From Octopus sinensis (lineage: Eukaryota): a DNA stretch of 25,961 nt. A model generated the notes under the pieces. It saw only the letters and a list, made by a program, of their open reading frames with translations, searched no databases and was not told the DNA's origin. A program made the position numbers and the translations under genes. Location: the NCBI RefSeq assembly GCF_006345805.1, contig NW_021835620.1:1-25961 (forward strand). Reading direction: 5' to 3'. How positions within the stretch are numbered: the first letter of the stretch is position 1; each line of letters opens with the position of its first letter. Positions 100-25,961 of the stretch are shown here, one piece after another.

Positions 100-598
100 G
101 TGTGGCTGGTGGACAATGGTTCGATCATACAGGTGGCGGAAGTAATCTCTTATGTCTACCTAACGACCCCATTTGGGCCAATTATACTACAGGAGAAGAA
201 AAAGGTGGTCACATTTATGGCAGTGAATATCAATTAGATTTATACCCAACAAATAAACTCTATTCTTTTGCTAATGCTAAATCATTCATGATCACAACGT
301 TCCGTGCGCTGTCTGTTTGACACGACGACCTGCTGTTGTTATGATGTTACCAGCCAGGACAAAGTGTTACCCTGGTTGGACAGCTGAGTATTCGGGATAT
401 TTGATGTCCGGTTATTTCGGGCATAAGGGCAGACATGAATATGTGTGTGTAGATTATGCACCAGAAGCTGATCCAGCTGGTTACAGAGACGAAAATGGAG
501 CTTTATTATATTTCGTTCAGGCTTCTTGTGGTTCATTGCCATGTCCACCGTATGTCGATGGTCAAGAATTAACCTGCGTTGTGTGCAGTAAATATTGA
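100..598 (+). CDS. Terminal exon (copy A1) of a short-chain collagen C4-like gene, C-terminal Cys-rich NC1-like domain; 1-bp frameshift at ~284
   Basis: Polypyrimidine tract plus AG at 98-99 (phase 1). Motifs GGGSNLLCLPNDP, YGSEYQ, (H)DHNVPCAVC, PARTKCYPGWTAEYSGYLM, EYVCVD, LPCPPY, ELTCVVCSKY*. ORFs 102..320 and 317..598 are one exon: A1 reads tcattcat where paralogs read tcacttcat (A4) or tcaattcat (A2). Confidence 0.85.
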
Positions 599-2044: not shown

Positions 2045-2178
<134 letters not shown>

Positions 2179-2564: not shown

Positions 2565-2598
<34 letters not shown>

Positions 2599-4592: not shown

Positions 4593-4736
4593 ATGGATTT
4601 CGCACAACTGTCCAGGAATATTTCGCAGCGTTATTCCATTTCTTCTCTCATAGCTTTTGCGGTTCTTCTCGTTCTGACGATCGTGATTCTTCATCAAGAT
4701 TCAAGAATAGGAAAAATGGAAGAGAAATCGAAAACG
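4593..4736 (+). CDS. Probable first coding exon with an N-terminal signal anchor/TM segment, plausibly of a collagen C4-like paralog
   Basis: ATG with A at -3 and G at +4. Encodes MDFAQLSRNISQRYSISSLIAFAVLLVLTIVILHQDSRIGKMEEKSKT and ends at a perfect donor ACG|GTAAGT (4737-4742), followed by microsatellite. Assignment to the collagen family is inference from position. Confidence 0.6.
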
Positions 4737-6734: not shown

Positions 6735-6820
<86 letters not shown>

Positions 6821-6839
6821 TATATGTATAATATATATA

Positions 6840-6922
<83 letters not shown>

Positions 6923-6925
6923 ATA

Positions 6926-6956
<31 letters not shown>

Positions 6957-6997
6957 TATGATATATATATATATATATGTATATTATATATGTAATA

Positions 6998-7053
<56 letters not shown>
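6665..7053. repeat. Long (TA)n tract
   Basis: Seen directly; mirror tract at 17493-17780. Confidence 0.98.
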
Positions 7054-7056
<3 letters not shown>

Positions 7057-7061
7057 TGTGT

Positions 7062-7347
7062 GGAGGCGCAGTGGCCTAGTGGTTAGGGCAGCGGACTCAT
7101 GATTGTCGGATCGAGGCTTCGATACCCAGACTGGGCGTAGTGAGTGTTTAATGCTCCACGAGCCGCGGGGGATTGTGTTGTTGTGATCCCTGCTGTACTC
7201 TTTCGCTACAACTTTCTTCCCTTCGTCTGTTGGCCTGCTCGCTTAACCAGCGGGGTGGCGTATTTGAAGGCTAAAACAACGCGAAGCGCATTGTGACCAG
7301 CGATATGTAGCAACAACTGATAGCCTGGTCTGTGACGGTAATCACGG
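7062..7347 (+). mobile_element. tRNA-derived SINE (second family)
   Basis: A box TGGCCTAGTGG at 7072-7082 and B box-like GCTTCGATACC at 7116-7126. The head does not close into a cloverleaf with CCA or terminator and continues into a ~200-bp body. Inverted copy at 17240-17486. Confidence 0.8.
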
Positions 7348-7349
7348 AG

Positions 7350-8400
7350 ATATATGTATCATACGCACACAATACACACACACACACACACATACACACG
7401 TACATACACACATACAGCACAGATGCCCACATATACTTTAACGAACAATACTCATACAGATACGCACAGACTTATACACACATGGGCACAGACACACACG
7501 TACATACACGTACTTAAGCGCACACACGCACACAAGCAAACGCACGCACATTACGCTCACACAACTCCAAAAACCCACACAAACACACGCATGTACAAAT
7601 TCACATACACACCGATACATATACATGCACACAATATACGCCTACACGCGCACACACACATACACTTACGTATACACAATAAGACGCAGGCACACACACA
7701 CGAAAGTAAAACATGCGCACACATGCGGACGCACACAGGCACAATAATACAGACACCGAAACTCACAACCCCACGGATACACGCATATGCACCCATATTC
7801 AGACACACATACAAACGCACACGTACACGCACACACAACTACGCGCACATACGACACGCACATACATACAAACACACAGAAATGAACCAGCACATACCTC
7901 CCATACACACGGCACACAATTATACATTCACGCACACAATTATACATACATGTATGCACACATACGCACAGTTATTTGCCACACACCCAAACTCTACACA
8001 CACACACACACGTGTCATCATTGCTCACATATACACATACACACACACGCACACATACACTATGTAAAGCACAGTTATTCGCCACACACCCTAACTCTAC
8101 GCCTACACACACGACCACACACATACACACACACACACTACAAACAAAACACACACACGATACATATACATACACACACATACTTCAAACTAGCAGTACC
8201 CACTACTTGACCTGTGTAGAGACAAAAGAGCCACGCCCAATTCCTTCTTCTTAACACTACTAGCCCTACAACACGCAAAGATTAACAGCCACAACCACAC
8301 ACACATACACACACACACGCACACACACACACACACGTGTCATTATTGCACACATACACACAGACACACACACGCGCACGCAGACCTCCGCGTCCGCACA
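7350..8400. repeat. ~1-kb cryptic CA/CATA-rich low-complexity tract
   Basis: Seen directly; alignable mirror at ~16290-17230. Internal ~103-bp duplication (7966 and 8069) present only in this arm. Confidence 0.9.
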
Positions 8401-8419
8401 TATCCACACTTACCACACA

Positions 8420-8700
8420 CATACTTCTTCCTCCACCAATCTCCTGTCTTTGAAAGAACTTTTCTTCACCCATTTCCTTCCGGTCATTTAAAATGTGACG
8501 GGTGTGTACCGTTAGCGATTTTTTTCCCCTGTCTTCCCTCCTCTGGATCTTTCCATCTCGTATGTTTCCGACGAAGAGCTCCACCCGAAACGTTAAACCC
8601 TCCTTCTTTCTTTCTTTCCTGGCGTCCAATAATACTATGTTTGTTCCACGTCCTCGCGTTGTTGTGTTTCTTCGTGCTTTTTTGTTTGGATTAAATTTAA
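8420..8700 (+). mobile_element. Penelope-like element terminal-repeat fragment
   Basis: Carries CCGACGAAG...CCGAAACGTT, the hammerhead-like signature of PLE terminal repeats, followed by a pyrimidine/T-rich tail abutting (TA)n. Partial mirror at 16057-16290. Confidence 0.5.
8564..8598 (+). ncRNA. Minimal type I hammerhead-like motif (degenerate)
   Basis: Stem I GTTT/AAAC, core CCGACGA(A), weak stem II GAGCTCCACCC, GAAA, palindromic stem III ACGT, putative GUU cleavage triplet. Confidence 0.4.
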
Positions 8701-8715
8701 CTATATATATACATG

Positions 8716-8764
<49 letters not shown>

Positions 8765-8832
8765 GAAATATCTGGTGTATATATATATTATATATATGTG
8801 TGTGTTGTGTGTGGGTGGTGTGTATGTGTGTA

Positions 8833-9177
8833 CTAGCAGAAATACCCGGCATTGCTTGGGATTCAATTGGCAAAGTTGGTATATAATATATTCCAGTCAT
8901 TTTGAAACAGGTGATATGGGAAAGTGCAACATTGACAACAAAACATTTGTAGAGTAAATGCTGGGCTAATTCGACTAAGCAACATGCTATGCGTCTGTTT
9001 GGAGTGTTTCAGGCCCTAACCTGTCATGCAAATTGGAGGTGGGGTTTGTGTGATTTTGAACGCACCGAAAAGCTGTCAGTTGATATACTCTCCATTGCAG
9101 AAGGTGCGCTGTGTCTAACACGACCATCATCGGAAATTTTGACACCTCACGTCGGGTGTGTTGTCCTACATCACTCA
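8833..9177 (-). mobile_element. Helitron 3' part with terminus
   Basis: The minus strand ends CCCAAGCAATGCCGGG (decayed hairpin), 8 nt, then CTAG|T: the canonical Helitron 3' end followed by host T. It is contiguous with sequence homologous to the Rep-motif region at 15869-16044. Confidence 0.7.
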
Positions 9178-9449
9178 AGAAATCTCTCGACGATAAACCT
9201 GATGACACACCAAGTAAGAACTAATTTTACGCCTAAAGTCTTTTACCCGTGTCTCTTTAACTAATGATTTATAATTTCACCAACTTTGAATTAGTTCCAC
9301 ATTACTATCCATATGTCCACAATAGTATATACTAAGACACTTGCCTGAATTTGTTTCGAAATATATTCTACTTTACAATAATTTCCTAAATAAAATGTTA
9401 CTCTAATATACTATGCCATTTGTGTTGTATATGAGTATATGTGCAGTGC

Positions 9450-11400
9450 TACGTCGAGAATTGTTTCTGCCCGCACGGTGCCCCCGAGGGTGCTCTTCGC
9501 CGAGTGTCCGAGGCGGCCGGTACGTTCACCGTGAAAAAAATTAGTGTCCAGAGCGAGCCCCACCGGCTTGCATGCGAAAAGAATGGAATGCCCTCTTCAT
9601 CGGAGAATCAAATCCCCGAGCTGGCGCTTCACTGCGTTTATATCTACAATTCAGCATTCTGTCCACTCTTGTGCTTCCAATCATTCGTGAATAGAGACCC
9701 GAAATAATTATGTTCCACTTTCCTACACAGTGCGTATTTATCAATCCTGCCTTGGGGTACCTGGCAGCCAACCCATTCAGTGCACGTTGTTGGTGACCAT
9801 CAGACGAATCAGGTAGCAGCATGTCGTTTACAAATAACAGTCGACCGATCAGGTAGAGATGAATTGGGATACCTCTACAACAATGGCTGCGCATATTCAA
9901 CCAGATCACAAAAAAGATAGTGAGAAGGGGCACTAACAATGCACATTTCAACTAAGTGAAACCTTCAAGTTGAAAACTTCGACTTTTGCATAAATACAAT
10001 CATTTGAACACATATAAGTTCTTTATGGCAACCTGTATTTGCCCATTAAACTCACCCTCTGGTAAGCTATCCGCAACATGCCCCAGGGCGCGTGATCGTG
10101 TGCCTTTTCGTGGTTTACAGCGTATAAATCTTGGAAATATTCAATTGTTTGCTGGAAGATCTGTCTTTGAATGACTCACTCTCTTGTTGGCTGTACTGTG
10201 TCCCGGACAGTAATCGTGGGAGCGACAATTTCCCTACATATCTTTTCCTGATATCTAGTGTAGACTTTCTATAATTAAACACACTCTTTGGTCTCTGTTT
10301 GAAAAAATTTTGATTGTCCCCCCATATTACCATTACCTTCATGTTTTTTCAAAGGTCCCATTCACCTTGCATACATGGGTCACTCAGAGAATACCATCTG
10401 TATTTAAGGTCTCTAAAATATGAAGCCGAACGTGCTTATCACCAGCAGCTTTACCACTTTTAAGTGAATTCAAATAAGCGTCCAACCGAAGAAGAACCTG
10501 CCGAATAAAATAATACAACCACGAATCCTTTCGATGTCCAATTTCATTCAGTCTCCAGTCAGTCATACATTTGCATGCAAACTCCACAATTTTATATCTG
10601 ATTCCAGCATCCACAGCGGCTTCCAACTGTATTCTGTAGGTCGCACTGGACTTACCAATTTCCAGTGTTCGGCAGGACTGTAGGAATTTTCAGGTTTTCA
10701 GACATTTAGGTAGTGACGAGTTGACAACTCTACCCCTTCCTTTTACCCGAACGTTCATCAAAGAGTGAAAGATGACCGAAATCTATCAAAAATCTCTGTC
10801 ACCAAGTATTTCTATACCAGGCACCCTTATAATTATCCCTGTCTTAAAATAATATCTATACCATAGAGAGGAGTGTGTGTATCCTGCACTGAAGGCTGCT
10901 ATGACCTCTCCATTAAGTTCACTGACGACATTCCTTCCAATCAATCCTTCTCACGGTTATCAGTGCCAAGGTGTGCACTGAAGTCTCCTTGCAGGACAAA
11001 TGACTTTACCCCAAATATTTCTAAAGCTGAGGTGAATTTGCTTAGGAAGGATTTGTATTTGACCCAGCTGTTTGCTGCATATACTTACAGCAGCCACAGT
11101 GGTCCTACATATTCAGCCTTAGCTTCAAGAGGTGATCCCTCACACCTAGTAGGTTTCACTCCATAATACAATCCGAAAGCTGGGGATTGAGAGTATCCTA
11201 ATCCCACCTGTGCAGACATTGTTGGCACCACAGTTGCGTAGTGGAGTTTCAAGCCTATATCCAAGTGTACGCTATCGGAGAAAGGAAATTTTGTAGAGGA
11301 GACACCGATTATATCTTACAGGCAGATTATATCTAACAATTTTGATGTTTTAATTCTCAATTATTAAGTATTGTTCCCTTCTTGATCTGCTTTGTTGTCC
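9450..11400 (-). mobile_element. Decayed, internally deleted RTE-clade LINE (EN+RT)
   Basis: Mirror of 13250-15240. GDFSAHLG at 10988-10965; also LKSGKAAG and LLFVND. Confidence 0.8.
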
Positions 11401-11703
11401 TGAGACCGTCAATTTTGTGCTCCCACACCAAGCACCCCAGATTAATTTGCAGGCTTCTTGCTTGTTGCACCGGTATTGGGTGGGTTGTGCTATACATTTA
11501 TCGAACGGACTCCTCTACTCGAGATCCGGATGCGATGTCTTTTAACTAAATCGACAAATGATGCGGTATGGTTGTTATTTTCATATTGTAGTTATGATGG
11601 CCTTATTTGCGCCGAGTTCCAAACTGATATTTGTAATTGACCGATGAATATTCGCACCTGGCGAATATTTTATCATTATTCTATTGAGTTTTACAATTAT
11701 TCT

Positions 11704-11844
11704 ATTGCAGCAGTGTGCGCTGTGTCTAACACGACCCATCATCGGAAATTTTGACACCTCACGTCGGGTTTGTTGTCCTACATCACTCATAGAGTAAATT
11801 TGGAGGAACTGTGGTTGTTCATTTGCGGGTACCAGGGGATAGAC
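11704..11844 (-). mobile_element. Duplicated Helitron Rep fragment (VY..PANEQPQFLQIYSMSD)
   Basis: Reverse complement of 15814-15954. Confidence 0.7.
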
Positions 11845-11846: not shown

Positions 11847-12173
11847 TACCTTACAAAGATATACTGGATAATTAATGAGGTGATGTGGTGCATGAAAAGA
11901 GCAAGGTTTTAGCGATAGGACGATTTCGGTGAGGCGGAGAAGAATAGAAGTGCATTCTGTACTCTGTTGTGTTCTCTCACTAATATTTAGTCTCTCTATT
12001 TTACTTAATGAATACAGTCCTTAGCTTTTCCCATCACATATAGTATGTGGCTTGTCCAGTCCTCATTCTACATTGTGCGTCCTTTTCATTAACCATTTAC
12101 AGTCACTGTCATCAATTCTAATATACTCTATTCAATTTAATCCACACCTACGATCATTGGGCACTCTAGTTAA
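11847..12173. repeat. ~330-bp direct repeat D1 (partner D2 at 20035-20365)
   Basis: Aligns directly to 20035-20365 at roughly 95% identity; offset 8188 bp. Confidence 0.95.
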
Positions 12174-12568
12174 TGATAGAAAAGTGGCCACTATTCAGCT
12201 CTAGTCACTCACGTACAATACCACCATCCGTAGCCTGTACAATTGATCACCAGTTAGCATCCTTTTCACTTGGTCCGTTGTAGACAACATATAATATTCT
12301 GATTTGACCAAATACCTACAAAGAAGTAAGCAGTCTGGTAGTGTTGTATATAGTCTACAGGTATAGACGTTTGAAAAGTGACATACCATAAGAGGATTTG
12401 AGAATGTTTATGTTAGACAACCCGACAAAGGTTGAGTGTGTGTGCGTGTGCGTGAGAGAGAGGGTTAGAGAGAAAGAGAGGCAACAAAAAGAGAGAATGA
12501 GAGGTATAAAAAGAGAACAAGAGAAAGACAAAAAGAGATGAGAGATCAGAAATATAAAGTATACTAAC

Positions 12569-12643
12569 CGTCATATACAAGGTTTGAATAAGGAGGACAA
12601 GTTGTTCTGCCCCACCGGGTATACAATGATCCGAGACCGGGTT
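12569..12643 (-). CDS. Penultimate exon of the short-chain collagen C4-like gene: (E)PGLGSLYTRWGRTTCPPYSNLVYD(G)
   Basis: Acceptor tttcattttaatttcacAG and donor G|GTTAGT. It is 75 nt, phase 1 to phase 1. The YTRWGRTTC...LVYDG motif starts this domain, and the phase-1 end joins exactly to G|GT GTG GCT GGT GGA of the terminal exons. Confidence 0.9.
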
Positions 12644-13249
12644 CTGTGAAATTAAAATGAAATAATGTAGTTTAAAAGAAAGAATTGGGGGATCATTTAC
12701 AAAGTAGGATGTTGGATGGGAAGGAATTGATGGAGAAGAGAGAAAGATAGAATTTAAGAAAGAACGAGTGAATGAATGAAAGTCAGAACGAAAGATGTAA
12801 ATAATAAGAATAAATTGTAAAGAAAGAAAAAAGACATTTGTCTGTTGAGCCTGTTGGTGACGTTGATGTCAAAGATTTGAGAGATTAATCTCAGAATATC
12901 AGAATGTGTATCGGTCTCCGCTATGAACGGATGTATGTATGATACGTAAACTTGGGTATGAGTATATATACTTCTCAATAGAATAATGATAAAACTCAAT
13001 AGAATAATGATAAAATATTCGCCAGGTGCGAATATTCATCGGTCAATTCCAAATATCAGTTTGGAGCTCGGCGCAAATAAGGCCATCATAACTACAACAT
13101 GAAAATAACAACCATATCGCATCATTTGTCGATTTAGTTAAAAGACATCGCATCCGGATGTCGAGTAGAGGAGTCCGTTCGATAAATGTATAGCACAACC
13201 CACCTAATACCTGTGCAACCAGCAAGAAGCCTGCAACTTAATCTGGGGT

Positions 13250-15240
13250 GCGTGGGGTGGGAGCACAAAATTGACGGTCTCAGGAAACCAAAGCAGATCA
13301 AGAAGGGAACAACCTTTAAAAATTGAGAATTCAAACGTCAAAATTGTTAGATATAATCTGCCTGTAAGATATAATCGGTGTCTCCTCTACAAAATTTCCT
13401 TTCTCCGATAGTGTATACATGGATATAGGCTTGAAACTCCACGACGCAACTGTGGTGCCAACAATGTCTGCACAGGTGGGATTAGGATACTCTCAATGCC
13501 CAGCTTTCGGATTGTATAATGGAGTGAAACCTACTAGGTGTGAGGGTTCACCTCTTGAAGCTAAGGCTGAATATGAAAGACCACTGTGGCTGCTGTAAAT
13601 ATATGCAGCAAACAGCGGGGTCAAATATAAATCCTTCTTAAGCAAATTCACCCGAGGTTTAGATATATTTTGGGGTAAAGTCATTTGTCCTGCAAGGAGA
13701 CTTCAGTGCACACCTTGGCACTGATAACCGTGAGAAGGATTGATTGAAAGGAATGTCGTCAGTGAACTTAATGGAGAGGTCATAGCAGCCTTCTGTGCAG
13801 GATACACACTCTCCTCTCTATGGTATAAATATTATTTTAAGACAGGGATATTTATAAGGGTGCTTGGTATAGAAATACTTGGTGACAGAGGTTTCTGATA
13901 GATTTCGGTCATCTTTCACTCTTTGCTGAACGTTCGGGTAAAAGGAGGGGTGGAGTTGTCAACTCGTCACTACCTAAATGTCTGAAAACCTGAAAATTCC
14001 TACAGTCTGCCGAACACTGGAAATTGGTAAGTCCAGTTCGACCTACATAATACAGTTGGAAGCCGCAGTGGATGCTGGGACCAGAAACAAATATGTGGAG
14101 ACTTTTGCATCCAAATTGAGAGTGACCCTCCTGAATGAAGTTGGACATCGAAATGGATTCGTGATTGTATTATTTTATTCAGCAGGTTCTTCTTCGGTTG
14201 AACGCTTATTTGAGCTAAAATCACTTAAAAGTGATAAAGCTGCTGGTGAAAAGCACGTTCGGCTTGATATTTTAGAAACCTTAAATACAGATGGTATTCT
14301 CTGAGTGACCCATGTATGCTAGGTGGATTGGACCTCTGGAAAAAACACCAAGGCAATGGTTATATGGGGTGAAAATTACAATTTTCTTCAAACTAAGACC
14401 AAAGATTGTGTTCTAATTATCGAAAAGTCTACACTAGATTTCAGGAAACGATAAGTAGGGAAATTGTCGCGCCCAAGATTACTGTCCGGGACGCAGTACA
14501 CCTGACCTTTTAGACGATGAAAGACAGATCTTCCAGCAAACATTGAAATATTTCCAAGGTTTATACGCTGTAAACCACGAAAAGGCACACGATCACGTGC
14601 CCTGAGGCATGTTGTGGATGGTTTACCCGGAAGGTGTGTTAATGTGCAATAGTGTTTGCCATAAAGTACTTATATGTATGTTCAAAAAAATTTTATTTAT
14701 GTAAAATTCGAAAGTTTTCAACGTGAAGGTTTCACTTAGTTGAAGTGTGCTTTGTTAGTGCCCCATCTCACATTCTTTTTGTGATTGGTTGAATATGCGC
14801 AACCATTGTAGTAGAGGTATCGCAATTCATCTCTACGTGATCGGTCGACTGTTATTTGTAGACGACATGCTTCTAACTGATTCGTCTGATGGTCACCAAC
14901 AACGTGCACTGAATTGGTCGGCTGCCGAGTACCCAAAGGCAGGATTGACAAATACGCACTATGTAGGAAAGTGGAAAATCATTATTTCGAATCTCTATTC
15001 ACGAACGATTGGAAGCAGAAGAGTGGACAGGATGCTGAATTGTAGATATAAACGCAGTGAAGCGCCAGCTCGGGCATTTGATTCTCAGATGAAGAGGGTA
15101 TTCCATGCTTTTCGTATGCAAGTCGGTGGGGCTCGCTCTGAGCACTCTAATTTTTTCACAGTGAACGTACCGGCCGCCTCGGACACTCGGCGAAGAGCAC
15201 CCTCAGAGGAACTGTGCGAGCCGAAACAATTCTCGACGTA
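13250..15240 (+). mobile_element. Decayed, internally deleted RTE-clade LINE (APE endonuclease + reverse transcriptase)
   Basis: In order: DIIGVSSTK...GLKLHDATVVPTMSAQVG, IYAANS, GDFSAHLG (13696-13719), KAAG (14236-14247), PGRSTPD (14486-14506), EKAHDHVP*GMLW (from 14579), LLFVDD (14849-14866). Stops, frameshifts and compressed motif spacing. Confidence 0.85.
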
Positions 15241-15624
15241 GCACTGCATATATACTCATATACACACAATAAATGGAATAGTATATTAGAATAACATTTT
15301 ATTTAGGAAATTATTGCAAAGTAGAACATATTTTGAAATAAATTCAGTCAAGTGTCTTAGTATATATTATTGTGGACATATGGATAGTATTGTGGAACTA
15401 ATTCAAAGTTGGTGAAATTATAAATCATTAGTTAAGGAGACACGGGTAAAAGACTTTAGCCATAAAATTAGTTCTTACTTGGTGTGTCATCAGGTTTATC
15501 GTCGAGAGATTTCTTGGAGATGAAACGGTTCTGTGAAAAAATAGAAATAGCATCATATAAATAGAACTTCAGGGTATTTATTACCGTTTAGAACTTAAAA
15601 CAATGCAATAGATGAGAACATATT

Positions 15625-16044
15625 CGGACAGGTATCATAGCCAACACTACCATCTCAACGCCTTAGGAATCTTCTAGAAGGCGCTTCCATCCAGCCAAAG
15701 GATTTTTTGAACAATATCAGACAATAAAACTCAGCATTTCAAATGACGTCGCTTGGTGAATCTAAGAAGATAGATAAACATGAATTTACGCCGAAGTCAA
15801 AGTTCAAGGGCAAGTCTATCCCCTGGTACCCGCAAATGAACAACCACAGTTCCTCCAAATTTACTCTATGAGTGATGTAGGACAACAAACCCGACGTGAA
15901 GTCTCAGAATTTCCGATGATGGGCCGTGTTAGACACAGCGCACACTGCTGCAAAGGAGAGTATATCCACTGACAGCTTTTTCGGTGCGTTCAAAAATCAC
16001 AAAAAACCAACCTCCAATTTTGCATGACAGGTTAGGACTTGAAA
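15625..16044 (+). mobile_element. Helitron RepHel N-terminal coding relic
   Basis: GQVS*PTLPSQRLRNLLEG...FLNNIRQ*NSAFQMTSLG (15704-15757), then after a frameshift KVQGQVY (15799-15819) and PQFLQIYSMSD (from 15844). These match the Helitron helicase-like N-terminal motifs NIRQYNSAFQMTSFG, FKVQGQVY and PKFLQIYF. Confidence 0.8.
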
Positions 16045-16097
16045 GTATAATACCTGATAGTATTATTGGACGCTCAGGAAAGAAAGAAAGAAGGAGG

Positions 16098-16132
16098 GTT
16101 TAACGTTTCGGGTGAGACACTTCGTCGGAAAC
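16098..16132 (-). ncRNA. Second copy of the minimal hammerhead-like motif
   Basis: The minus strand reads GTTT CCGACGA AGTGTCTCACCC GAAA CGTT AAAC. Confidence 0.35.
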
Positions 16133-17239
16133 ATACGAGATGGAAAGATCCAGAGGAGTGAAGACAGAGGAAAAAAAATCGCCAGCGGTACACACGCGTC
16201 ACATTTTGAATGACCGAAGGAAATGGGTGAAAAAGTCCTTTCAAAGACAGGAGAGAGGTAGAGGAGGAGGAATGTGGTGTAAGTGTGGATAAGAGCGTGT
16301 GCGGAGGTCTGCGTGTGTGTTTGTGTGTGTATGTGTCTATGTGTGCAATGATGGCACGTGTGTGTGTGTGCGTGTGTGTGTATGTGGTGTTGTGGCTGTT
16401 AATCTTTACGTGTTGTAGGGTTAGTAGTTTAAGTCAAGGAAGAAAGAAGGATTGGGCGTGGCTCCTTTTGTCTCTACCACAGGTCAAGTAGTAGGTACTG
16501 CTAGTTTGATGTATGTGGTGTGTGCGTGTATGTATATGTATCGTGTGTGTGTGTGTGTATGTATGTGGTGTTCGTGTGTGTATGCGTAGATTTTGGGTAT
16601 GTGGCCAATAACTGTGCTTCACTTAGTGTATGTGTGCGTGTGTGCTTGTGTACGTGCGTATGTGTGTATACCTGTTGAAAAAAAAATGTGTGCCGTGTGT
16701 ATGGGATGTATGTTTGGCTCATTTGTTGTGTGTGTGTGTAGTGCGTGCGTGTCGTATGTGTTTGTAGTTGTGTGTGCATGTACGTGTGCGTTTCTATGTG
16801 TGTGTGTAAGTGTTATATAGGTGTATATACGTATATCCGTGGTGGTTGTGAGTTTTGGGTGTGTGCATTCGTGTGCGTGGTGCGTCCGTATGTTGTGTTG
16901 TTTTGCGTGCGTGTGTGTGTCTGTGTCTATGTGTTACGATGTGTATGTGTGTGTATGCGTGCGTGTAGGCATATTGTGTGTAAGTATATGTATCGATGTG
17001 TATGTGAATTTGTACATGCGTGTATGTGTATGTTTTTGGAGTTGTGTAGGCGTAATGTGCGTGCGTGTGCTTGTGTGCGTGTGTGCGCTTACGTGCGTGT
17101 ATGTGCGTGTGTGTCTGTGCCCATGTGTGTATAAGTGTGTACGTATTTGTATGAGTATTGTGGGCATCTGTGCTGGTATATGTGTATGTACGTGTGTATG
17201 TGTGTGTGTGTGTATTGTGTGCGTATGATATATATATCC

Positions 17240-17486
17240 CCGTGATCACCGTCACAGACCAGTTGTTGCTACATATCGCTGGTCACAATGCGCTTCGCGT
17301 TGTTTTAGCCTTTAAATGACACCACCCCGCTGTTTAAGCGAGCAGGCCAACAGAGTGATCCACAACAACCCAACTCCCTGAGCTCGTGGAGCATTAAACA
17401 CACACAACGCCGAGTCTGGGAATCGAAACCGCGATCCGACAAACCATGAGTGCGCTTGCCCTAACCACTGGGCCACTGTGGCCTCC
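17240..17486 (-). mobile_element. tRNA-derived SINE, mirror of 7062-7347
   Basis: The minus strand starts GGAGGCCACAGTGGCCCAGTGGTTAG, has B box GGTTTCGATTCC, and shares the same 3' body. Confidence 0.8.
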
Positions 17487-17492
17487 ACACAG

Positions 17493-17510
17493 ATATATAT
17501 ATATATATAC

Positions 17511-17546
<36 letters not shown>

Positions 17547-17547
17547 G

Positions 17548-17595
<48 letters not shown>

Positions 17596-17668
17596 TTAAT
17601 ATATATATTATATAATATATATATATATGTAATATATATATATTATATATATATATATATATATATGG

Positions 17669-17736
<68 letters not shown>

Positions 17737-17780
17737 TATATATAATATATATATATAAATACATATCAATATATATATGT
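17493..17780. repeat. Long (TA)n tract
   Basis: Seen directly. Confidence 0.98.
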
Positions 17781-18674
17781 ATACACTCTTCTGCGAGTTT
17801 GATACTTTTATGTTACAGACGGAGATAATTTGTTGAACTCGATGTTTTGTGGTGTTGCTGTAGATTCGGTTGATGCTGTTCCTGAAGTTTACTCATATTT
17901 CTTGTGGTTTCATATTTTATTTGGCACATCAGTTTTCAGGGACCGATGAGAGGCTGCGTGTGTAATGTGAGGCGAGGTTGTGTGTGTGTGTGATTTTTGT
18001 AGAAGAGTGGGAATATTTGAATGTAGGTTGAAAATAGTTAATCGTGGGACGTGTACTTGTACCCTTGTCGAAAGAGTTTCGTGAAACACCTGACAAGTAG
18101 TTAGGTAGTTAACATTTTGTGGTAGTTCTTCAGCGGATATCAAATATCCTTTATTTGGTAATATCGCGATGATTGGATTGCAGACCTTCATCGCATCGAT
18201 TGTAGTTACAATGATACGTATGTGAGTTGTTTTTTACTAACCCATCATGATTTAGTGATGTTAGTTATAAGCTTTTATCGTGTTTTCTGAAGATTGATCA
18301 TGAAAGGGTGATATATTTGTACGGATGTTTCATTTGTGGATTGTTTTCATTTTAAGACGGAATACAACACACATTTAAACGAATCATCATTTTATTTCAA
18401 ATTTAAATTTGATAACTGAACCTCATACAATGTATTCTAGAATCATTCCCTGAGGATTACATCGTTCTGTAAGCTATTGTCACATTCTATGACGTCTCGT
18501 GTTTCGTTTTGAATATTTTCTGAAAACTTGTAGCAGCAATTTATTTAACGACATATATTAGTCGGATGAAATATTGCAAAACACAAATACAAGAAACGTA
18601 TATGTTGCTCTATTTATTTTATTTATGATTCGCCGATATAAATTTTCATATAGAAACGAAATGTAAATTTCTAT

Positions 18675-19174
18675 TCAATATTTACTGCACACAATGCAGG
18701 TTAATTCTCGAACATTGACATACGGTGGACATGGCAATGAACCACAAGCAGCCTGAACGAAATACAGTAGAGCTCCATCTTCGTTTCTGTAACCCGCTGG
18801 ATCAGCTTCTGAGTGCATAGTCCACACACACATATTCAAGTTTGCCTTTATGCCCGTAATGACCGGACATCAAATATCCCGAAATACTCAGCTGTCCAAC
18901 CAGCGTAACACTTGGTCCTGGCTGGAACATCATAACAACAGCAGGTTGTCGTCACCAAACAGACAGCGCACGGAACTGTTGTGATCATGAATTGATTCAG
19001 CATTAGCAAAAGAAAAGAGTTATAGTTGGGGGTATAATTCCAGTTGATATTCACTGCCATAAAGTAAGCACTTTTTGTATCTCCTGTCGTATAATTGGCC
19101 CAAATGGGGTCGTTAGGTAGACACAAGAGATTACTTCCGCCCACAGTATGGCTATAAAGTGTCCACAGCCACAC
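18675..19174 (-). pseudogene. Terminal exon copy A2 of the short-chain collagen C4-like gene, with multiple 1-bp indels
   Basis: Acceptor AG at 19176-19175 and TGA at 18677-18675. Motifs GSNLLCLPNDPIW, VPCAVC, CYAGWTAEY, MSGHYGHKG, LPCPPY, CIVCSKY* appear in shifting frames. The 3' flank is only patchily (~75%) similar to A1/A4. Confidence 0.85.
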
Positions 19175-19389
19175 CTAGAATTGGTAGAATAAACCAAGTA
19201 AAAAAGATGTTAAGCAAAATTATATGTGAAATAACGGAAATATTCATTACAAATTGACACTTAAAAGGAGTCATGTTAGTCGTTGTGAACGAATTTGTTT
19301 TGTATATATGTTAGTGTTTGTAAGTGTAAGCTGTGTGTGCTTGAATGCTTGAGAACGTAGCTGTGCATTTGCCTTGTCATCATATGTAC

Positions 19390-19477
<88 letters not shown>
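19390..19477. repeat. Intronic (TA)n tract upstream of A2
   Basis: About 215 bp from the acceptor, at the same intron position as the (AT)17 palindrome centre. Confidence 0.97.
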
Positions 19478-19480
<3 letters not shown>

Positions 19481-19499
19481 TACTAAGCAGCATCAAGGA

Positions 19500-20030
19500 T
19501 CTCCAGATGTAATGCGGTACGCTTGGTTTCATGCAAATCCAATTATATATATTGATGGAGAAAAAAAGAAAGATATTTTATAACGCATGCACTCGTGTTT
19601 ATCCAAAATGGAAAGGATGTTCACGTTGTGAACGGGATATTTTGGGTTGTGGAAATTGTGGTGGTTTTTGAGTAGGACAATAGGGGAGACGACGAGATGC
19701 AGAGAAGTGGTGGGTAACCGTCGATGAAATGTTGTTTAGTCGATCATACGAGAGTCAGTGGCTAAACCTCTCGTTTAGACTCGACGAATCAGGCTTACAT
19801 AGACGTTATGATCACACAGACCTTTTTTCATGCAATACACAGAAACGAGGTGGGAGGTAAAATTGTTGAGGATCAGTGATGGCTTAGTGCTTAATAATAA
19901 ATGACGGCGAAGTGGGCGACCGATAAAGGATTCGCGTAGGGTTTATAGAGAGTAGATTCAGAGCATTAGGGATTGTGTGAGGTTGATTGGGGACGCAGTT
20001 TTGTAGCAGCAGTTTGAATTGGAAGTTTCG
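19500..20030 (-). mobile_element. Possible very old CR1/L2-type LINE endonuclease relic
   Basis: Minus-strand ILYRSPTSPSF (19925-19914 core), followed in another frame by GLCDHNV (19816-19805), resembling the YRSP...GDFN motifs. Weak. Confidence 0.3.
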
Positions 20031-20034
20031 GAAT

Positions 20035-20365
20035 TACCTTACAAAGATATACTGGATAATTAATGAGGTGATGTGTGGTGCATGAAAAGAGCAAGGTTTT
20101 AGCGACAGGACGATTTCGGTGAGGCGGAGAAGAATAGAAGTGCATTCTGTACTCTGTTGTGTTCTCTCACTAACATTTAGTCTCTCTCTATTTTACTTAA
20201 TGAATAAGGTCCTTAGCTTTTTCCATCAGTTACAGTATGTGGCTTGTCCAGTCCTCATTCTACATTGTGCGTTCATTCCATTAACCATTTACAGTCACTG
20301 TCATCAATTCTAATAGACTCCATTCAATTTAGCCCACACCTACGATCATTGGGCACTCTAGTTAA
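20035..20365. repeat. Direct repeat D2
   Basis: Partner of 11847-12173; cut at 20365 by the palindrome arm with a 2-bp AA overlap. Confidence 0.95.
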
Positions 20366-20529
20366 AGAAAAGAGTTTATTTGAGTAGTAGCCTAATTGAT
20401 ATTCACTGCCATAAATGTAACCACTTTTTTCAACTTCAGTCGTATAATTGGCCCAAATTGGATCGTTAGGTAAACACAAGAGATTACTACCGCCACCTGT
20501 GTGGTCATAAAATTGTCCACCAACCACAC
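20364..20529 (-). pseudogene. 3'-truncated terminal exon copy A3 (first ~55 codons)
   Basis: Intact acceptor at 20531-20530. Encodes VVGGQFYDHTGGGSNLLCLPNDPIWANYTTEVEKSGYIYGSEYQLGYYSNKLFS, then fuses to D2. Confidence 0.9.
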
Positions 20530-20738
20530 CTAGAATTGGTAAGAATAAATCAATTAAAAAAGAAGATATTAAGCAAAATTATATATGAAATAACGGAAAC
20601 ATTCATTACAATTTGACCCTTAAAAGAAGTCATGTTTAGTCGCGTGTGAAGGAATTGTGGTGTATATATGTTAGCGTTTATGTGAGTGTAAGAAGTGTCG
20701 CTGTATGCATGGGATCATAGCTGTGCATTTGCATTCTC

Positions 20739-20778
<40 letters not shown>

Positions 20779-21150
20779 GAGAATGCAAATGCACAGCTAT
20801 GATCCCATGCATACAGCGACACTTCTTACACTCACATAAACGAAAACATATATACACCACAATTCCTTCACACGCGACTAAACATGACTTCTTTTAAGGG
20901 TCAAATTGTAATGAATGTTCCGTTATTTCATATATAATTTTGTAATATCTTCTTTTTTTTAATTGATTTATTCTTACCAATTTCGGTGTGGTTGGTGGAC
21001 AATTTTATGACCACACAGGTGGCGGTAGTAATCTCTTGTGTTTACCTAACGATCCAATTGGGCCAATTATACGACTGAAGTTGAAAAAAGTGGTTACATT
21101 TATGGCAGTGAATATCAATTAGGCTACTACTCAAATAAACTCTTTTCTTT
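20364..21150. repeat. 787-bp near-perfect palindrome with (AT)17 centre and no unique spacer
   Basis: 20364-20741 is the reverse complement of 20776-21150, with about six mostly indel mismatches. The centre 20742-20775 is self-complementary. Confidence 0.97.
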
Positions 21151-21481
21151 TGCTAACGCTAAATCACTTCATGATCACAACGTTCCGTGCGCTGTCTGTT
21201 TGACACGACAACCTGCTGTTGTTATGATGTTACCAGCCAGGACAAAATGTTACCCTGGTTGGACAGCTGAGTATTCAGGATATTTGATGGCCGAACATTA
21301 TAATAGTAAGGGCAGACATGAATATGTGTGTGTGGACTATGCACCAGAAGCTGATCCAGCAGGTTACAGAAACGAAGATGGAGCTGTTTTATATTTCGTT
21401 CAGGCTGCTTGTGGTTCATTGCCATGTCCACCGTATATCAATGGTCAAGAATTAACCTGCGTTGTGTGCAGTAAATATTGA
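20986..21481 (+). CDS. Terminal exon copy A4 of the short-chain collagen C4-like gene; apparent acceptor loss (tttcg) and 1-bp deletion at ~21059
   Basis: Same motifs as A1. Both defects are absent from its mirror arm A3 (ttctag; aatttgg), which suggests consensus error or very recent mutation. Confidence 0.85.
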
Positions 21482-21591
21482 ACAGAAATTAAATTCGGTT
21501 CCATATGAAAATATCTCTGTGAATTACAATAAATAACATAAAGTATTAATTGTGTTACCTAATACTTTCTTTAAAGTAAGTCTATCGTTAC

Positions 21592-21597
21592 AATAAA
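21592..21597 (+). terminator. Polyadenylation signal downstream of A4
   Basis: AATAAA at the position orthologous to 709-714. Confidence 0.45.
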
Positions 21598-22971
21598 CTG
21601 TTGTACTAGTTTACAGAAGATATTCAAACAATACAAAAGAGGCAACGTAGAATGCCAGAAATATCCTCAAAAACAAGAAAAATCTAAATCTGTCGGAATG
21701 ATTCTAGAAAACATTTTGTAAGATTTCAGTTTATCAAACTTATCGTTGAAATAAAATGTTATTTTGTTTAACAGTATTTTGTCTTCTGTCTCATGATTCA
21801 ACAAACCCCAAATAAAGTACCACCATAGAATTATATCAGCTTTTCATGCCCAGCCTTAGACAATCTAATACTCGACGCTACTATCTCAGACATCTTGGTT
21901 TTCAAATTACAACTCGGATTCTGACAAGGAGCCATGAACCGCTACATTACTTAGCACAGAACTTAACTGATTCTTTCAACAACAACCAGATACTTCCACA
22001 CAATCCATTCTATTTGACGTTATTAATCAGGAAAGCTCTCCGTTCCATTCCTACCCCATTCTTATAAAACCTATTTATCGTCTACTTTAGAAAATATCAC
22101 AAAATGTTCAATTAAAGCTTTCTGAGAATGTGGAATTTACACGATCAATCCTTCAAAAGACAGTATAAATGAGTATTGGTCCTGCCAACTATCTCTATAT
22201 CACAAAATTCCCACACCTCTTCAAAATAAGATACAAAACGAAACTCGATGCCCATAAACATACACGTCATACACTAAATGCTGATATACAAGAATAAGAA
22301 ATGAAATCAACCAGAAAAATTGCCTCATTTCGAAGAAGAGAACATCAAATACGACGATTTCTTTCACTCATCTACGTAAACATACCAGAACCGAAGAAAG
22401 GGAGGATCCTAGAAGCTGAATACATTTAATGCAAAACGAATACAACACCAAATAAGTGAGAGTAAAGAGAGCAATATAGTCAGGGCAATCACGGATGTTG
22501 TGTGTGAGAAGGAAGGAGATGTTGTGACCGTCACGTTATATCCAATAGGATTCATGACAGTATGTGGAGTGTGTCGAATATTTGTTAGATAAACGAGGTT
22601 TCGGTTAACAACATCAAGCTGCAATAAAGATAAAGATTATTAATGTTTACTATCCCACTATTATTAGTCTAATGGGTAAATCTGCATGCGCTTCTCCAGA
22701 TTACAAATATTTTCCTGGTTGTAAATCGTAAACAATTGCAGAGAATACGGACGCTGGTAGATCTTCAAATTCATCTTTGATTCAGCGGCATAATTAGACA
22801 GTTAAAACGACCGCCATGTGTTTAAGCTGTACAAGAGCATGCGCAGCTGCATATCCAACCCGCCATTACAAAAGGAAAAATATGGACTTTGTTGAAATCT
22901 GACATGGCTGTAAGATTTATTTTGTAGCTTATTTCGAATTAACCTTATTTCGAGGGCCAAACCGAGAGTGT

Positions 22972-22973
22972 AC

Positions 22974-23016
<43 letters not shown>

Positions 23017-23116
23017 GCACACACACACACGCACACACACCACCGCACCCACAAACACACACACACACACACACACAGATACAAACACACACAGACACAC
23101 ACACAAACACACACAT
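22972..23116. repeat. (CA)n microsatellite
   Basis: Seen directly. Confidence 0.97.
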
Positions 23117-23477
23117 ACATATAAATATATATATTATATATTAAATTAGGTAAAACTATATCTGAGGGGTCTAATAATATGCTTCATCTAAGAAATTTAA
23201 TCATAACTATGGAATTCCTCCGCCGTACATATGCAGTCCATACGGAAGGTGCACTTGCGAATTGAGTTTCAATGGGAGACACTGTACCTGTATGTTTTGC
23301 TATGATTTTAAAACAAGAAGAAACATATTCAAGCTAGTGATAATGACTAGCTAAAAATATGTATGAATGTCATTATTCGTTTTTAATAGAATATTTCTGG
23401 TCACAGAAGAGAGAACGGCTTCTAACTTAGTTCCAAGTATCTTTCATTGGAATTTCAACAACATGAACAGGATATTT

Positions 23478-23520
23478 TTGTATGTATGTCTGTATGTATG
23501 TAGGCATGCATGTATGCATG

Positions 23521-23554
<34 letters not shown>

Positions 23555-23843
23555 TGTATGTATGTATGTATGGTATGCTGAAGTAGTGTATGTATGTATG
23601 TATGTATGCATGTATGTAAGTAGGTATGCATGTATGTATGTATGTATGCATGTATGTATGTATGCATGTATGTAGTATATATATGCATGAATGTATGTAT
23701 GTATGTATGTATGGTATGCATGTATGTAAGTAGGTATGCATGTATGTATGTATGTATGCATGTATGACTGTATGCATGTATGTATTATATATGCATGAAT
23801 GTATGTATGATGTATGCATGTATGCATGTATGTATGCATGATG

Positions 23844-23874
<31 letters not shown>

Positions 23875-23911
23875 GTATGTATGTATGTATGCATGTATAA
23901 ATGTTTGTATG

Positions 23912-23942
<31 letters not shown>

Positions 23943-24023
23943 GTATGTATGTATGTATGCATGTATGAATGTTGTATGTATGTATGTATGTATTATATTT
24001 ATAATGAATGCATGTATGTATGT
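23478..24023. repeat. Degenerate (TATG)n array
   Basis: Seen directly. Confidence 0.96.
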
Positions 24024-24572
24024 CAGGTCACTTTCGAGTGCTACTGGTGACATGTAACCCAGTACACCCTGTTGCATTGTCGGGTCGTCGGCGACTAAGC
24101 CGGCAACCCCACCAGCTTGTTGGTGAGGAGGGAGTTTATTGGACACCTGCGGGATGAAAAACAAAACCCGTCAAAGAGCGGAGGAACTCTTGAGAATCAA
24201 CGGCCATCCAATATATGTCTTAAGGCTGTATCATTCGCGGGGACATAGAAATAATCGGACTGAATACCCGATCGCTCGGTTAAACCATTGGGATTGAAGG
24301 ACTCCTACACTTTGTTAGGGATCCTTCTAGGAGAAGGTAAGCAGGTAACTGGGATAAACTCGGACATAAAACCTGCGGCTCAGTGGTTACCGATGATGTA
24401 GACTTGTTCTTCTTTCGGATTATAGCTGCTGTTGCTTAGTGACTGGGATTGAACACAGTGCACAGCCTTTCCTCACTATAAAAAAAATCTTCATGCACAG
24501 GCATTGCAAGATAACAACATTGATTAAGCTTCGTGCAATGCCCATACTCGATAACGAGGGGGCAGCCACCAA
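24024..24572 (+). mobile_element. Element R2 (copy of 2858-3411)
   Basis: Aligns end to end with R1. Confidence 0.6.
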
Positions 24573-25183
24573 GTATGTTGTATGTATGTTGGATGGATGG
24601 ATGGATGTAAGTATGTATGCATGTATGTATGTATGTAAGTATGTTTGTATATATATGTATGTGTATATGTGGTCTATCATATATACATGCTTATATTCAA
24701 ACCACATGCAGTATACATGTATACATACATGTATGTATGTATACATATATGCATGCATGTATATATGTAAGTATAAAAGTATGTATGGTGTTTATGTATG
24801 TATGTATGTATTGTATGTATGTATGTGTGTGTGTGTATGTATGGTTGTATGTATGTATGTGTGTATGTATGCGTGTATGTATGTATATATGTGTGGTGTA
24901 TTATATATGTATGAATGAGGGTATGTATGTATGTATGTATGTATATATGTATGTATTTAAGTATGTGTGTATGTATGTATATATGATGTATGTATGGGGG
25001 GTATGTATGTATATATGTATGTATGGGGTATGTTGTATGTATGTATGTATGTATGTATGTATGTAGATGTATGTATGTTGTATGTATGTTGTATGTATGC
25101 TGTATGTATTATATATGTATGTATGTATATATGTATGTATGAATGTATGGTATAATGTATGTATGTATGCATGTATGGTAGTT
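24573..25183. repeat. Degenerate (TATG)n array between R2 and R3
   Basis: Seen directly. Confidence 0.95.
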
Positions 25184-25733
25184 CAGGTCACTTTCGAGTG
25201 CACTGGTAACATGTAACCCAGTACAAACCTGTTGCATTGTCGGGTCGTCGGCGACTAAGCCGGCAACCCCACCAGCTTGCTTGGTGAGGAGGGAGTTTAT
25301 TGGACACCTGCGGGATGAAAACAAAACCCGTCAAAGAGCGGAGGATCTCTTGAGAATCAACGGCCATCCAATATATGTCTTAAGGCTGATCATGCGCGGG
25401 GACATAGAACAGTAATCGGACTGAATACCCGATCGCGCGGTTTTAAACCATTGGGAGTGAAGGACTCCTGGACTTTCTAGGGCATCCTTCTAGGAGAAGG
25501 TAACTCAGGTAACTGGGATAACTCCGATATAAAACCTGCGGCTCAGTGGTTACCGATGATGTTGACTTGTTTTTTTTCGGATTATGGCTGGTGTTGCTTA
25601 GTGAGTGGGATTGACTCAGTGCACAGCCTTTCCTCGCTTTCAAAAAAAACTTCATGCACAGGCATAGCACGATAAAAACATTGATTAAGCTTCGTGCAAT
25701 GGCCCTACTCGATAACGAGGGGGCAGCCACCAA
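25184..25733 (+). mobile_element. Element R3 (tandem copy, period ~1160 bp)
   Basis: Aligns end to end with R1 and R2; followed by (TATG)n to the window end. Confidence 0.6.
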
Positions 25734-25961
25734 GTATGTATGTATGTATGTATGGATGGATGGATGGATGGATGTAAGTCTGTGTGTATGTATGTACGTA
25801 TGTATGTATGTATGTATGTATGTATGTATGTATGTATGTATGTATGTATGGTATATATGGTCTATCGATATATACATCTTATATTCATGCATACATGCAT
25901 GCATACATGTATACATACATAAATGTATGTATGCAGATATGCATGCATGTATGTAGTATGT

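What the first reader, a model, noticed from the sequence alone, without database searches (positions are those of the whole stretch)
11847..20365. 8.19-kb circularly permuted two-exon module bounded by 330-bp direct repeats
On the minus strand the order is D2, intron 3' half, terminal exon A2, 3' flank, TE blocks, upstream intron, penultimate exon, intron 5' half, D1. The gene's last two exons are in reversed order, and the duplicated D sequence lies inside the intron between them. Joining D1 to D2 as a circle restores penultimate exon, intron and terminal exon in perfect phase. This is the footprint expected from a re-integrated extrachromosomal circle or from one remaining unit of a tandem array. 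Recombination between D1 and D2 could excise a circle carrying a spliceable cassette.
Basis: partly seen in the sequence, partly recalled or inferred. Interest (0 to 1): 0.72.

Follow-up and report, generated by a model that had tools for sequence, protein, structure and literature searches.

The report
Two truncated neighbouring octopus gene copies
The "circularly permuted" exon pair is real, but it is simply the tail of one gene copy followed by the middle of the next copy in a tandem array of octopus short-chain collagen C4-like genes, both cut short by rearrangements; it is ordinary and there is no sign of a re-inserted DNA circle.

Summary
D1 (11847-12173) and D2 (20035-20365) are direct repeats, 94.3% identical and about 8.19 kb apart. 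On the minus strand a terminal exon (A2, 19174->18675) precedes a penultimate exon (E3, 12643->12569).

The window is Octopus DNA from a tandem array of short-chain collagen C4-like genes. In 13 canonical units from O. vulgaris and O. sinensis the order is always E1-E2-E3-D-E4, so D is ordinary intron-3 sequence.

The minus-strand module (D2-E4-E2-E3-D1) is colinear with the boundary between two successive array units. About 4.1 kb holding the intergenic spacer, exon 1 and the start of intron 1 is missing.

Each end of D is canonical on one copy and a rearrangement breakpoint on the other. D is therefore only the overlap of two truncated paralogues.

D2 is closer to copies in other species (97.6%, 97.0%) than to D1. 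D1 and D2 were sisters in 0 of 300 bootstraps. This argues against a recent circle or single-gene duplication.

A2 carries 10 one-base indels and lies in an indel-rich, probably poorly polished block. No intact gene is present in the window.

Verdict: a tandem-array remnant in a rearranged, pseudogenised stretch. Interest is low. The junctions still need read-level confirmation.

The parts
100..598 (+). A1: terminal exon (E4) of the preceding array unit; one frameshift as assembled
4593..4736 (+). E1 of copy alpha (plus strand), 98% identical to P0001 residues 1-48
6777..11714 (+). R arm of copy alpha: (TA)n tract, intron-1 tail, truncated exon 2 and most of intron 2. It is the inverted partner of 12970-17785.
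9178..9212 (+). Exon 2 remnant of copy alpha; the acceptor and the first ~17 nt are deleted
11705..11844 (+). 140-nt patch between copy alpha and D1. It is 97% identical to the reverse complement of 15814-15953. The junction with alpha (J1) shares 3-4 nt of microhomology.
11847..12173 (-). D1: intron-3 segment of copy beta. Its 3' end (11847) is a breakpoint (J2); its 5' end runs on into canonical intron.
12174..12568 (-). 5' part of intron 3 of copy beta (canonical)
12569..12643 (-). E3 (penultimate exon) of copy beta; intact, phase 1-1; the only E3 in the window
12644..15478 (-).
15479..15530 (-).
15531..17785 (-). 3' part of intron 1 of copy beta, ending in a ~270-nt (TA)n-rich tract (17515-17785)
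17785..17786 (.). J5: head-to-tail junction. The 3' flank of copy gamma is joined to the (TA)n tract of intron 1 of copy beta. About 4.1 kb is missing relative to L002 (8263-12352).
17786..18674 (-). 3' flank of copy gamma (matches L001 22820-23718 and L002 up to 8262)
18675..19174 (-). A2: terminal exon of copy gamma. It is 95.3% identical to P0001 E4 but carries 10 one-base indels.
19175..20034 (-). 3' part of intron 3 of copy gamma (canonical)
20035..20365 (-). D2: intron-3 segment of copy gamma. Its 5' end (20365) is a breakpoint (J3); its 3' end runs on into canonical intron.
20364..20758 (-). Left palindrome arm (Apal): intron-3 tail plus the first ~170 nt of an A3-type terminal exon, cut at J3
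20759..21160 (+). Right palindrome arm (start of A3 and its upstream intron). The centre at 20758/20759 lies inside a (TA)17 tract.
20986..21481 (+). A3: terminal exon of the next array unit; one frameshift and a lost AG acceptor as assembled

Best explanation
The window is a rearranged, apparently pseudogenised stretch of the Octopus tandem array of short-chain collagen C4-like genes. Each array unit runs E1-E2-E3-[intron 3 containing D]-E4.

On the minus strand lie two neighbouring array members, head to tail.
- Copy gamma keeps only D2, the rest of intron 3, E4 (A2) and about 0.9 kb of 3' flank.
- Copy beta keeps the end of intron 1, E2, intron 2, E3, the start of intron 3 and D1.

A deletion of about 4.1 kb fused gamma's flank to the (TA)n tract in beta's intron 1. 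It removed the spacer, beta's promoter and E1, and the start of intron 1.

Gamma is cut at the upstream edge of D by a junction to a fold-back (palindromic) copy of the next terminal exon. Beta is cut at the downstream edge of D by a junction, through a 140-nt patch copied from nearby, to an inverted third paralogue (alpha).

Because the two truncations overlap by 330 bp of intron 3, that overlap looks like a pair of direct repeats bounding a permuted module. It has no function of its own.

Shown: colinearity with canonical arrays, the position of each breakpoint, and that D1 and D2 are not sisters. Inferred: the order and mechanism of the events. These were probably microhomology- or (TA)n-hairpin-mediated template switches or breaks.
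For: Source. The best protein hits are Octopus short-chain collagen C4-like proteins (E = 6e-114, 86% identity).

Canonical order. The structure of P0001 in L001 puts D at L001 21178-21509, inside intron 3. A feature map of 8 loci (270 kb) shows 13 of 13 D copies in the order E3-D-E4, on the gene strand, within E1-E2-E3-D-E4 tandem units. The window reads E4+ E1+ E2+ | D- E3- E2- | E4- D- | E4part- | E4+.

Colinearity. Window 20368->11847 matches L002 5745->18239 in one orientation, except for L002 8263-12352. Canonical D-to-D spacing is 12.2-19.8 kb, against 8.19 kb here.

D boundaries. Upstream of D, the D1 side matches canonical intron while the D2 side is exon-4 sequence. Downstream of D, the D2 side matches canonical intron while the D1 side is the 140-nt patch.

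Age of the copies.
- D2 is 97.6% identical to O. vulgaris L002_5748 and 97.0% to O. sinensis L005_40051, but only 94.3% to D1.
- D1 and D2 were sisters in 0 of 300 bootstraps. D2 grouped with L002_5748, without D1, in 249 of 300.
- The inverted arms R+ and R- are 95.0% alike, no closer than to any other paralogue.

Junctions. They carry short microhomology or sit at (TA)n tracts.
Against: - The true orthologous locus in another assembly was not found, so the empty or ancestral state of each junction is inferred from paralogous units only.
- A head-to-tail junction made by deletion inside a tandem pair cannot be told by sequence from one made by a tandem duplication or a circle. Only the copies' relationships separate them, and that rests on 331 aligned columns in a family where gene conversion is possible.
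- Block 17786-20000 has about a 1:1 indel-to-substitution ratio. Three junctions lie at (TA)n or inside this noisy stretch, so part of the arrangement could be an assembly error.
Confidence: 0.8

Rival explanations
1. The contig is mis-assembled, wholly or in part. Real but non-adjacent paralogue fragments were joined at self-complementary (TA)n tracts or through a chimeric or fold-back long read. The permuted order would then not exist in the genome.
For: - Window 19429->17786 vs L002 has 36 small indels (32 of them 1 nt) against 39 mismatches. The neighbouring block beta has 5 indels against 78 mismatches (binned profile).
- A2 has 10 one-base indels.
- The palindrome arms differ by 3 mismatches and about 5 small indels, and the centre lies in (TA)17.
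- J5 and both outer ends of the large inverted repeat lie in (TA)n.
- None of the five junctions is spanned by any hit in 270 kb of O. vulgaris and O. sinensis cluster sequence.
Against: - The duplicated pieces differ mostly by substitutions (D1/D2: 15 mismatches, 2 gap events; R+/R-: 183 mismatches, 34 gap events). They are therefore distinct genomic copies, not one sequence read twice.
- J1/J2 carries a 140-nt patch 97% identical to a nearby sequence, and J3 lies in unique sequence with microhomology. Assemblers do not invent either.
- The left palindrome arm is only about 395 nt long, unlike whole-read fold-back artefacts.
Confidence: 0.14
2. A single gene was recently duplicated head to tail, or excised as an ~8.2-kb circle and re-inserted by recombination in D. 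D1 and D2 would then be the two products of one event, and the module could excise again.
For: - The topology (D-E4-...-E3-D in direct orientation) is what such an event would leave.
- Tandem arrays are known sources of circles (general knowledge, not tested here).
Against: - D1 and D2 are never sisters (0 of 300 bootstraps). D2 is nearer to copies in two other species than to D1.
- The native array already supplies the E4-to-E2/E3 order.
- D's ends are two unrelated breakpoints rather than a recombination site.
- The longest uninterrupted D1/D2 identity is 67 bp.
- No flanking remnant of a 'solo D' target is seen.
Confidence: 0.04
3. D is a mobile element or a terminal repeat (LTR-like) bounding an 8-kb composite transposon that captured gene fragments.
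For: Direct repeats of about 330 bp bound an 8-kb segment.
Against: - All 13 other D copies sit at the same place in intron 3 of canonical genes, in gene orientation, and never elsewhere in 270 kb.
- Homology continues beyond D into canonical intron on one side of each copy.
- No transposon protein domain was found in the ORFs tested.
Confidence: 0.01

Closest known systems
Tandemly arrayed gene families with truncated or pseudogenised members (unequal crossing-over and deletion products)
   Same: Head-to-tail paralogous units. The fragment order equals the end of one unit followed by the middle of the next. Copies differ by 4-8%, like other family members.
   Different: This stretch is also inverted relative to its neighbours. 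It has lost exon 1 of the downstream copy and everything upstream of D in the upstream copy.
Permutation by duplication: a tandem duplicate trimmed at both ends gives a circularly permuted order (model known from protein and gene evolution; from general knowledge)
   Same: Formally the same topology. Two successive units are trimmed at the 5' and 3' ends, leaving E4 before E2-E3 with a short overlap.
   Different: The two units are old paralogues, not a fresh duplicate. No open reading frame or transcript is shown to use the permuted order.
Fold-back inverted duplications at palindromic AT-rich repeats, and templated-insertion rearrangements of the FoSTeS/MMBIR type (from general knowledge)
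   Same: A zero-spacer palindrome is centred in (TA)17. A 140-nt patch copied from about 4 kb away sits at an inversion junction. Microhomology of 1-7 nt is present at the junctions.
   Different: The mechanism is inferred from sequence only. The copies involved differ in age, so several separate events are likely rather than one complex event.
Extrachromosomal circular DNA from tandem repeats, and its re-integration (from general knowledge)
   Same: A head-to-tail junction with direct repeats flanking one unit length.
   Different: The flanking repeats are not sister copies, and the junction is explained without a circle.

Membership tests
Octopus short-chain collagen C4-like gene family | Significant full-length similarity of the encoded exons to named family proteins | tested here: met
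   E = 6e-114, 86% identity, 100% query coverage to O. vulgaris P0001 and to others named 'short-chain collagen C4-like'.
Octopus short-chain collagen C4-like gene family | Same four-coding-exon structure and splice phases as an intact member | tested here: met
   E1-E4 were mapped. The E3 and E2 boundaries are identical to L001.
Octopus short-chain collagen C4-like gene family | A curated domain model (e.g. collagen IV NC1 / C4) matches | tested here: not met
   no Pfam family at E <= 1 or 0.1, either for the window protein or for P0001. The family name comes from the database source only.
Tandem-array remnant (two neighbouring paralogues) | The native array has units in one orientation, in the order that the module reproduces | tested here: met
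   8 loci, all with E1-E2-E3-D-E4 repeated; colinear with L002 5745-18239.
Tandem-array remnant (two neighbouring paralogues) | The two repeat copies are as divergent as ordinary paralogues and have separate closest relatives | tested here: met
   D1/D2 94.3%; D2 97.6% and 97.0% to copies in other species; sisters in 0 of 300 bootstraps.
Circle-derived (eccDNA) insertion | The flanking direct repeats are the two products of a single recombination, i.e. sister copies | tested here: not met
Circle-derived (eccDNA) insertion | An empty target site exists in a relative, or the circle is physically detected | not testable with these tools
   The orthologous locus was not found among 8 fetched loci. 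No read data or wet-lab data are available.
Transposon bounded by terminal direct repeats | The repeat is a discrete unit with its own ends, occurs in unrelated contexts, and the element encodes transposon proteins | tested here: not met
Fold-back palindrome at an AT-rich self-complementary tract | Inverted arms with no spacer, the centre in a self-complementary repeat, and near-identical arms | tested here: met
   arms 20364-20758 and 20759-21160, centre in (TA)17, 3 mismatches plus about 5 small indels.
Replication-based template switching (FoSTeS/MMBIR) | A templated insertion from nearby sequence, plus microhomology at every junction | tested here: inconclusive
   a 140-nt patch at 97% identity and 3-4 nt of microhomology at J1. 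J2 has none that is clear. J3 has an imperfect T-rich match. J5 has 1 nt.

The most novel reading that the evidence does not exclude
The 8.2-kb head-to-tail unit arose from, or can still give rise to, an extrachromosomal circle from the collagen C4-like array. On such a circle, or by back-splicing, E3 (12569) could be joined to A2 (19174) to give a scrambled transcript.
Probability: 0.03. Interest if true: 0.55.

Novelty: new member of a known kind. Interest (0 to 1): 0.14.

Why it matters
It matters mainly as a caution. In tandem gene arrays, two truncated neighbouring copies automatically look like a circularly permuted gene bounded by direct repeats. That signature is therefore not evidence for circles unless the repeats are sister copies.

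The locus also offers a compact example of rearrangement breakpoints clustering at (TA)n tracts in a cephalopod genome. It flags a stretch of the assembly that is probably poorly polished. It does not open a new biological question.

Tried and rejected
- **Pfam scans.** The reconstructed C-terminal domain, P0001 and four long ORFs in the 'TE blocks' gave no meaningful family. I therefore do not call the blocks transposons, nor the domain a curated C4 domain.
- **ARAGORN.** It found no tRNA. The tRNA-like SINE-looking sequence next to the (TA)n tracts stays unclassified.
- **Source locus and orthologue.** I fetched 8 loci (O. vulgaris OX597833.1 and O. sinensis CM016876.1). None matches the window at 97% or more over more than 663 bp, and none spans any junction. 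The species and the orthologous state remain unknown.
- **Literature.** A search for the gene family in octopus returned only an ink proteome paper.
- **D as a mobile element.** Rejected.
- **Inverted-repeat arms as a recent fold-back duplication of one gene.** Rejected because R+ and R- are no closer to each other than to other paralogues.
- **A2's frameshifts as proof of pseudogene decay.** Not accepted, because the indel-to-substitution ratio looks like sequencing error.
Full report
**1. What the window is.**
The window is eukaryotic, microsatellite-rich DNA. Three copies of a roughly 500-nt exon encode a cysteine-rich C-terminal domain. They are A1 at 100-598 (+), A2 at 19174->18675 (-) and A3 at 20986-21481 (+). 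A reconstruction of this domain finds Octopus vulgaris, O. sinensis and O. bimaculoides proteins that NCBI names 'short-chain collagen C4-like'. The best hit is P0001, with E = 6e-114 and 86% identity. No Pfam model matches it.

**2. The observation.**
Self-BLAST confirms the direct repeat D1 11847-12173 / D2 20035-20365. It has 94.3% identity, 15 mismatches and 2 gap events, at an offset of 8188-8192 bp.
- A 75-nt exon lies on the minus strand at 12643->12569, with an AG acceptor and a GT donor. It encodes ...PGLGSLYTRWGRTTCPPYSNLVYD/G.
- It is the only copy of this exon in the window.
- A2 begins at 19174, right after an AG.

**3. The canonical gene.**
The O. vulgaris locus of P0001 (L001) has four coding exons: E1 10001-10144, E2 17969-18019, E3 20579-20656 and E4 22322-22819. 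The window's D matches L001 21178-21509, inside intron 3.

I mapped E1, E2, E3, D and E4 on eight fetched loci from the O. vulgaris and O. sinensis clusters, 270 kb in all. Every one of the 13 D copies lies between an E3 and an E4 on the gene strand. The units E1-E2-E3-D-E4 follow one another head to tail, with D-to-D spacings of 12.2-19.8 kb.

D is thus ordinary intron sequence of a tandemly arrayed family. It is not a discrete element.

**4. What the module is.**
The window's feature string is E4+ E1+ E2+ | D- E3- E2- | E4- D- | E4part- | E4+.
- Read on the minus strand, the module is D2-E4-E2-E3-D1.
- A canonical array reads D-E4-E1-E2-E3-D. The module is that order without E1.
- Window 20368->11847 is colinear, in one orientation, with L002 5745->18239. 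Only L002 8263-12352 has no counterpart. That missing segment holds the intergenic spacer, E1 and the first part of intron 1.
- The junction (J5, 17785/17786) joins gamma's 3' flank (...GCAGAAGAG) to the TGTATAC...(TA)n tract. That tract also precedes the same intron-1 segment in copy alpha and in L001.

A2 therefore belongs to an upstream copy (gamma). E2 (15530->15479, intact) and E3 belong to the next copy (beta).

**5. Why only D is repeated.**
- Upstream of D, the D1 side continues as canonical intron and matches L002 5698-5747. The D2 side is the 5' part of a terminal exon (junction J3, 20364/5).
- Downstream of D, the D2 side continues as canonical intron and matches L002 6077-6126. The D1 side is a 140-nt patch (J2, 11846/7).

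Each end of the 'repeat' is thus one truncation breakpoint. D is the 330-bp overlap of two truncated copies.

**6. Age of the copies.**
- D2 is 97.6% identical to the O. vulgaris copy L002_5748 and 97.0% to the O. sinensis copy L005_40051. Those two are 98.2% alike. D2 is only 94.3% identical to D1.
- In 300 bootstraps D1 and D2 were never sisters. D2 grouped with L002_5748, excluding D1, in 249.
- The arms of the large inverted repeat (6777-11714 vs 17785-12970) are 95.0% alike in their inner kilobase. That is no closer than either arm is to eight other paralogues.

The window is therefore a mosaic of old family members (alpha, beta, gamma and the A1/A3 type). It is not the product of a recent duplication or circle integration. 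D1 and D2 share at most 67 bp of uninterrupted identity, which makes them a poor substrate for homologous excision.

**7. The other junctions.**
- Alpha (plus strand: E1 at 4593-4736 and a truncated E2 at 9178-9212) ends at 11714. It joins, with 3-4 nt of microhomology, a 140-nt patch (11705-11844). The patch is 97% identical to the reverse complement of beta's 15814-15953.
- J3 lies at an imperfect T-rich microhomology.
- Next to it, 20364-20758 and 20759-21160 form a zero-spacer palindrome. Its centre is a (TA)17 tract that canonical genes carry about 230 nt upstream of E4. The arms differ by 3 mismatches and about 5 small indels.
- None of the five junctions is spanned by any alignment in the 270 kb of reference cluster sequence.

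**8. Coding state and sequence quality.**
- Against the intact E4, A2 has 10 one-base indels. A1 has a net frameshift. A3 has one frameshift and a lost acceptor AG. Alpha's E2 lacks its acceptor. As assembled, no intact gene is present.
- Block 17786-19429 differs from L002 by 36 small indels against 39 substitutions. The adjacent beta block shows 5 against 78.
- A roughly 1:1 ratio is typical of unpolished long-read consensus, not of evolution.
- The frameshifts in A2 may therefore be errors. The stretch 17.8-21.2 kb, which contains J5, J3 and J4, needs read-level confirmation.
- Against a pure artefact: the duplicated pieces differ mainly by substitutions, and J1/J2 carries a templated patch.

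**9. Splice phase.**
E2 ends in phase 1 and E3 is a symmetric 1-1 exon. O. vulgaris models P0020 and P0041 join E2 directly to E4. Any E3 or E2 of the family fits any E4. 'Perfect phase' is therefore uninformative.

**10. Verdict.**
The finding is an ordinary by-product of a rearranged tandem array, with an assembly-quality caveat.

Related gene models in O. sinensis and O. vulgaris (P0019, P0026, P0031) also contain duplicated E2, E3 or partial E4 pieces. Such internal rearrangements therefore recur in this family.

Noticed in passing
window 20364-21160: A zero-spacer palindrome with arms of about 395 nt, centred in a (TA)17 tract. The arms differ by 3 mismatches and about 5 small indels. It is either a very recent fold-back duplication of the start of exon A3 or an artefact.
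   Followed up: partly
window 11705-11844: A 140-nt patch at the inversion junction. It is 97% identical to the reverse complement of 15814-15953 and 93.5% to 9091-9180, so it looks like a templated insertion.
   Followed up: partly
window 17786-20000 (also 20800-21200): Excess of single-base indels relative to the closest O. vulgaris copy (36 indels vs 39 substitutions over 1.65 kb). Neighbouring blocks have about 0.3% indels. This is probably low consensus quality.
   Followed up: partly
window 100-598, 9178-9212, 18675-19174, 20986-21481: All three full terminal exons carry frameshifts as assembled. A3 has also lost its AG acceptor, and the plus-strand exon 2 lacks its acceptor and first ~17 nt. 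The window holds no intact gene.
   Followed up: yes
window 1-3965 vs 20884-25141; 23514-24769 vs 24706-25958: A direct duplication at 87-92% identity marks the array period (about 20.9 kb here). Within the 3' flank, a ~1.2-kb unit rich in (TGTA)n is itself tandemly repeated.
   Followed up: no
window 7090-7200 (+) and 17380-17490 (-): A sequence with tRNA-like motifs (GGCCCAGTGGTTAGGGC...GGTTTCGATTCCC) lies directly next to the long (TA)n tracts. It may be a tRNA-derived SINE. ARAGORN calls no tRNA.
   Followed up: partly
L001 11773-16549: The O. vulgaris P0001 gene has about 4.8 kb in intron 1 with no counterpart in the window. This is an insertion there or a deletion here.
   Followed up: no
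proteins P0019, P0026, P0031 (O. sinensis / O. vulgaris gene models): These models contain a partial E4 followed by E2 and another E4, or a frame-shifted E3 followed by a second E2-E3. Internal segmental duplications therefore recur in this family.
   Followed up: no
window 12258-12263 vs L001 20968-21090; L005 2307-5546: Copy beta lacks 123 nt of intron 3 that most units have. O. sinensis unit L005_5221 shares this shorter spacing and groups with D1 in the tree, so it may be beta's orthologue.
   Followed up: partly
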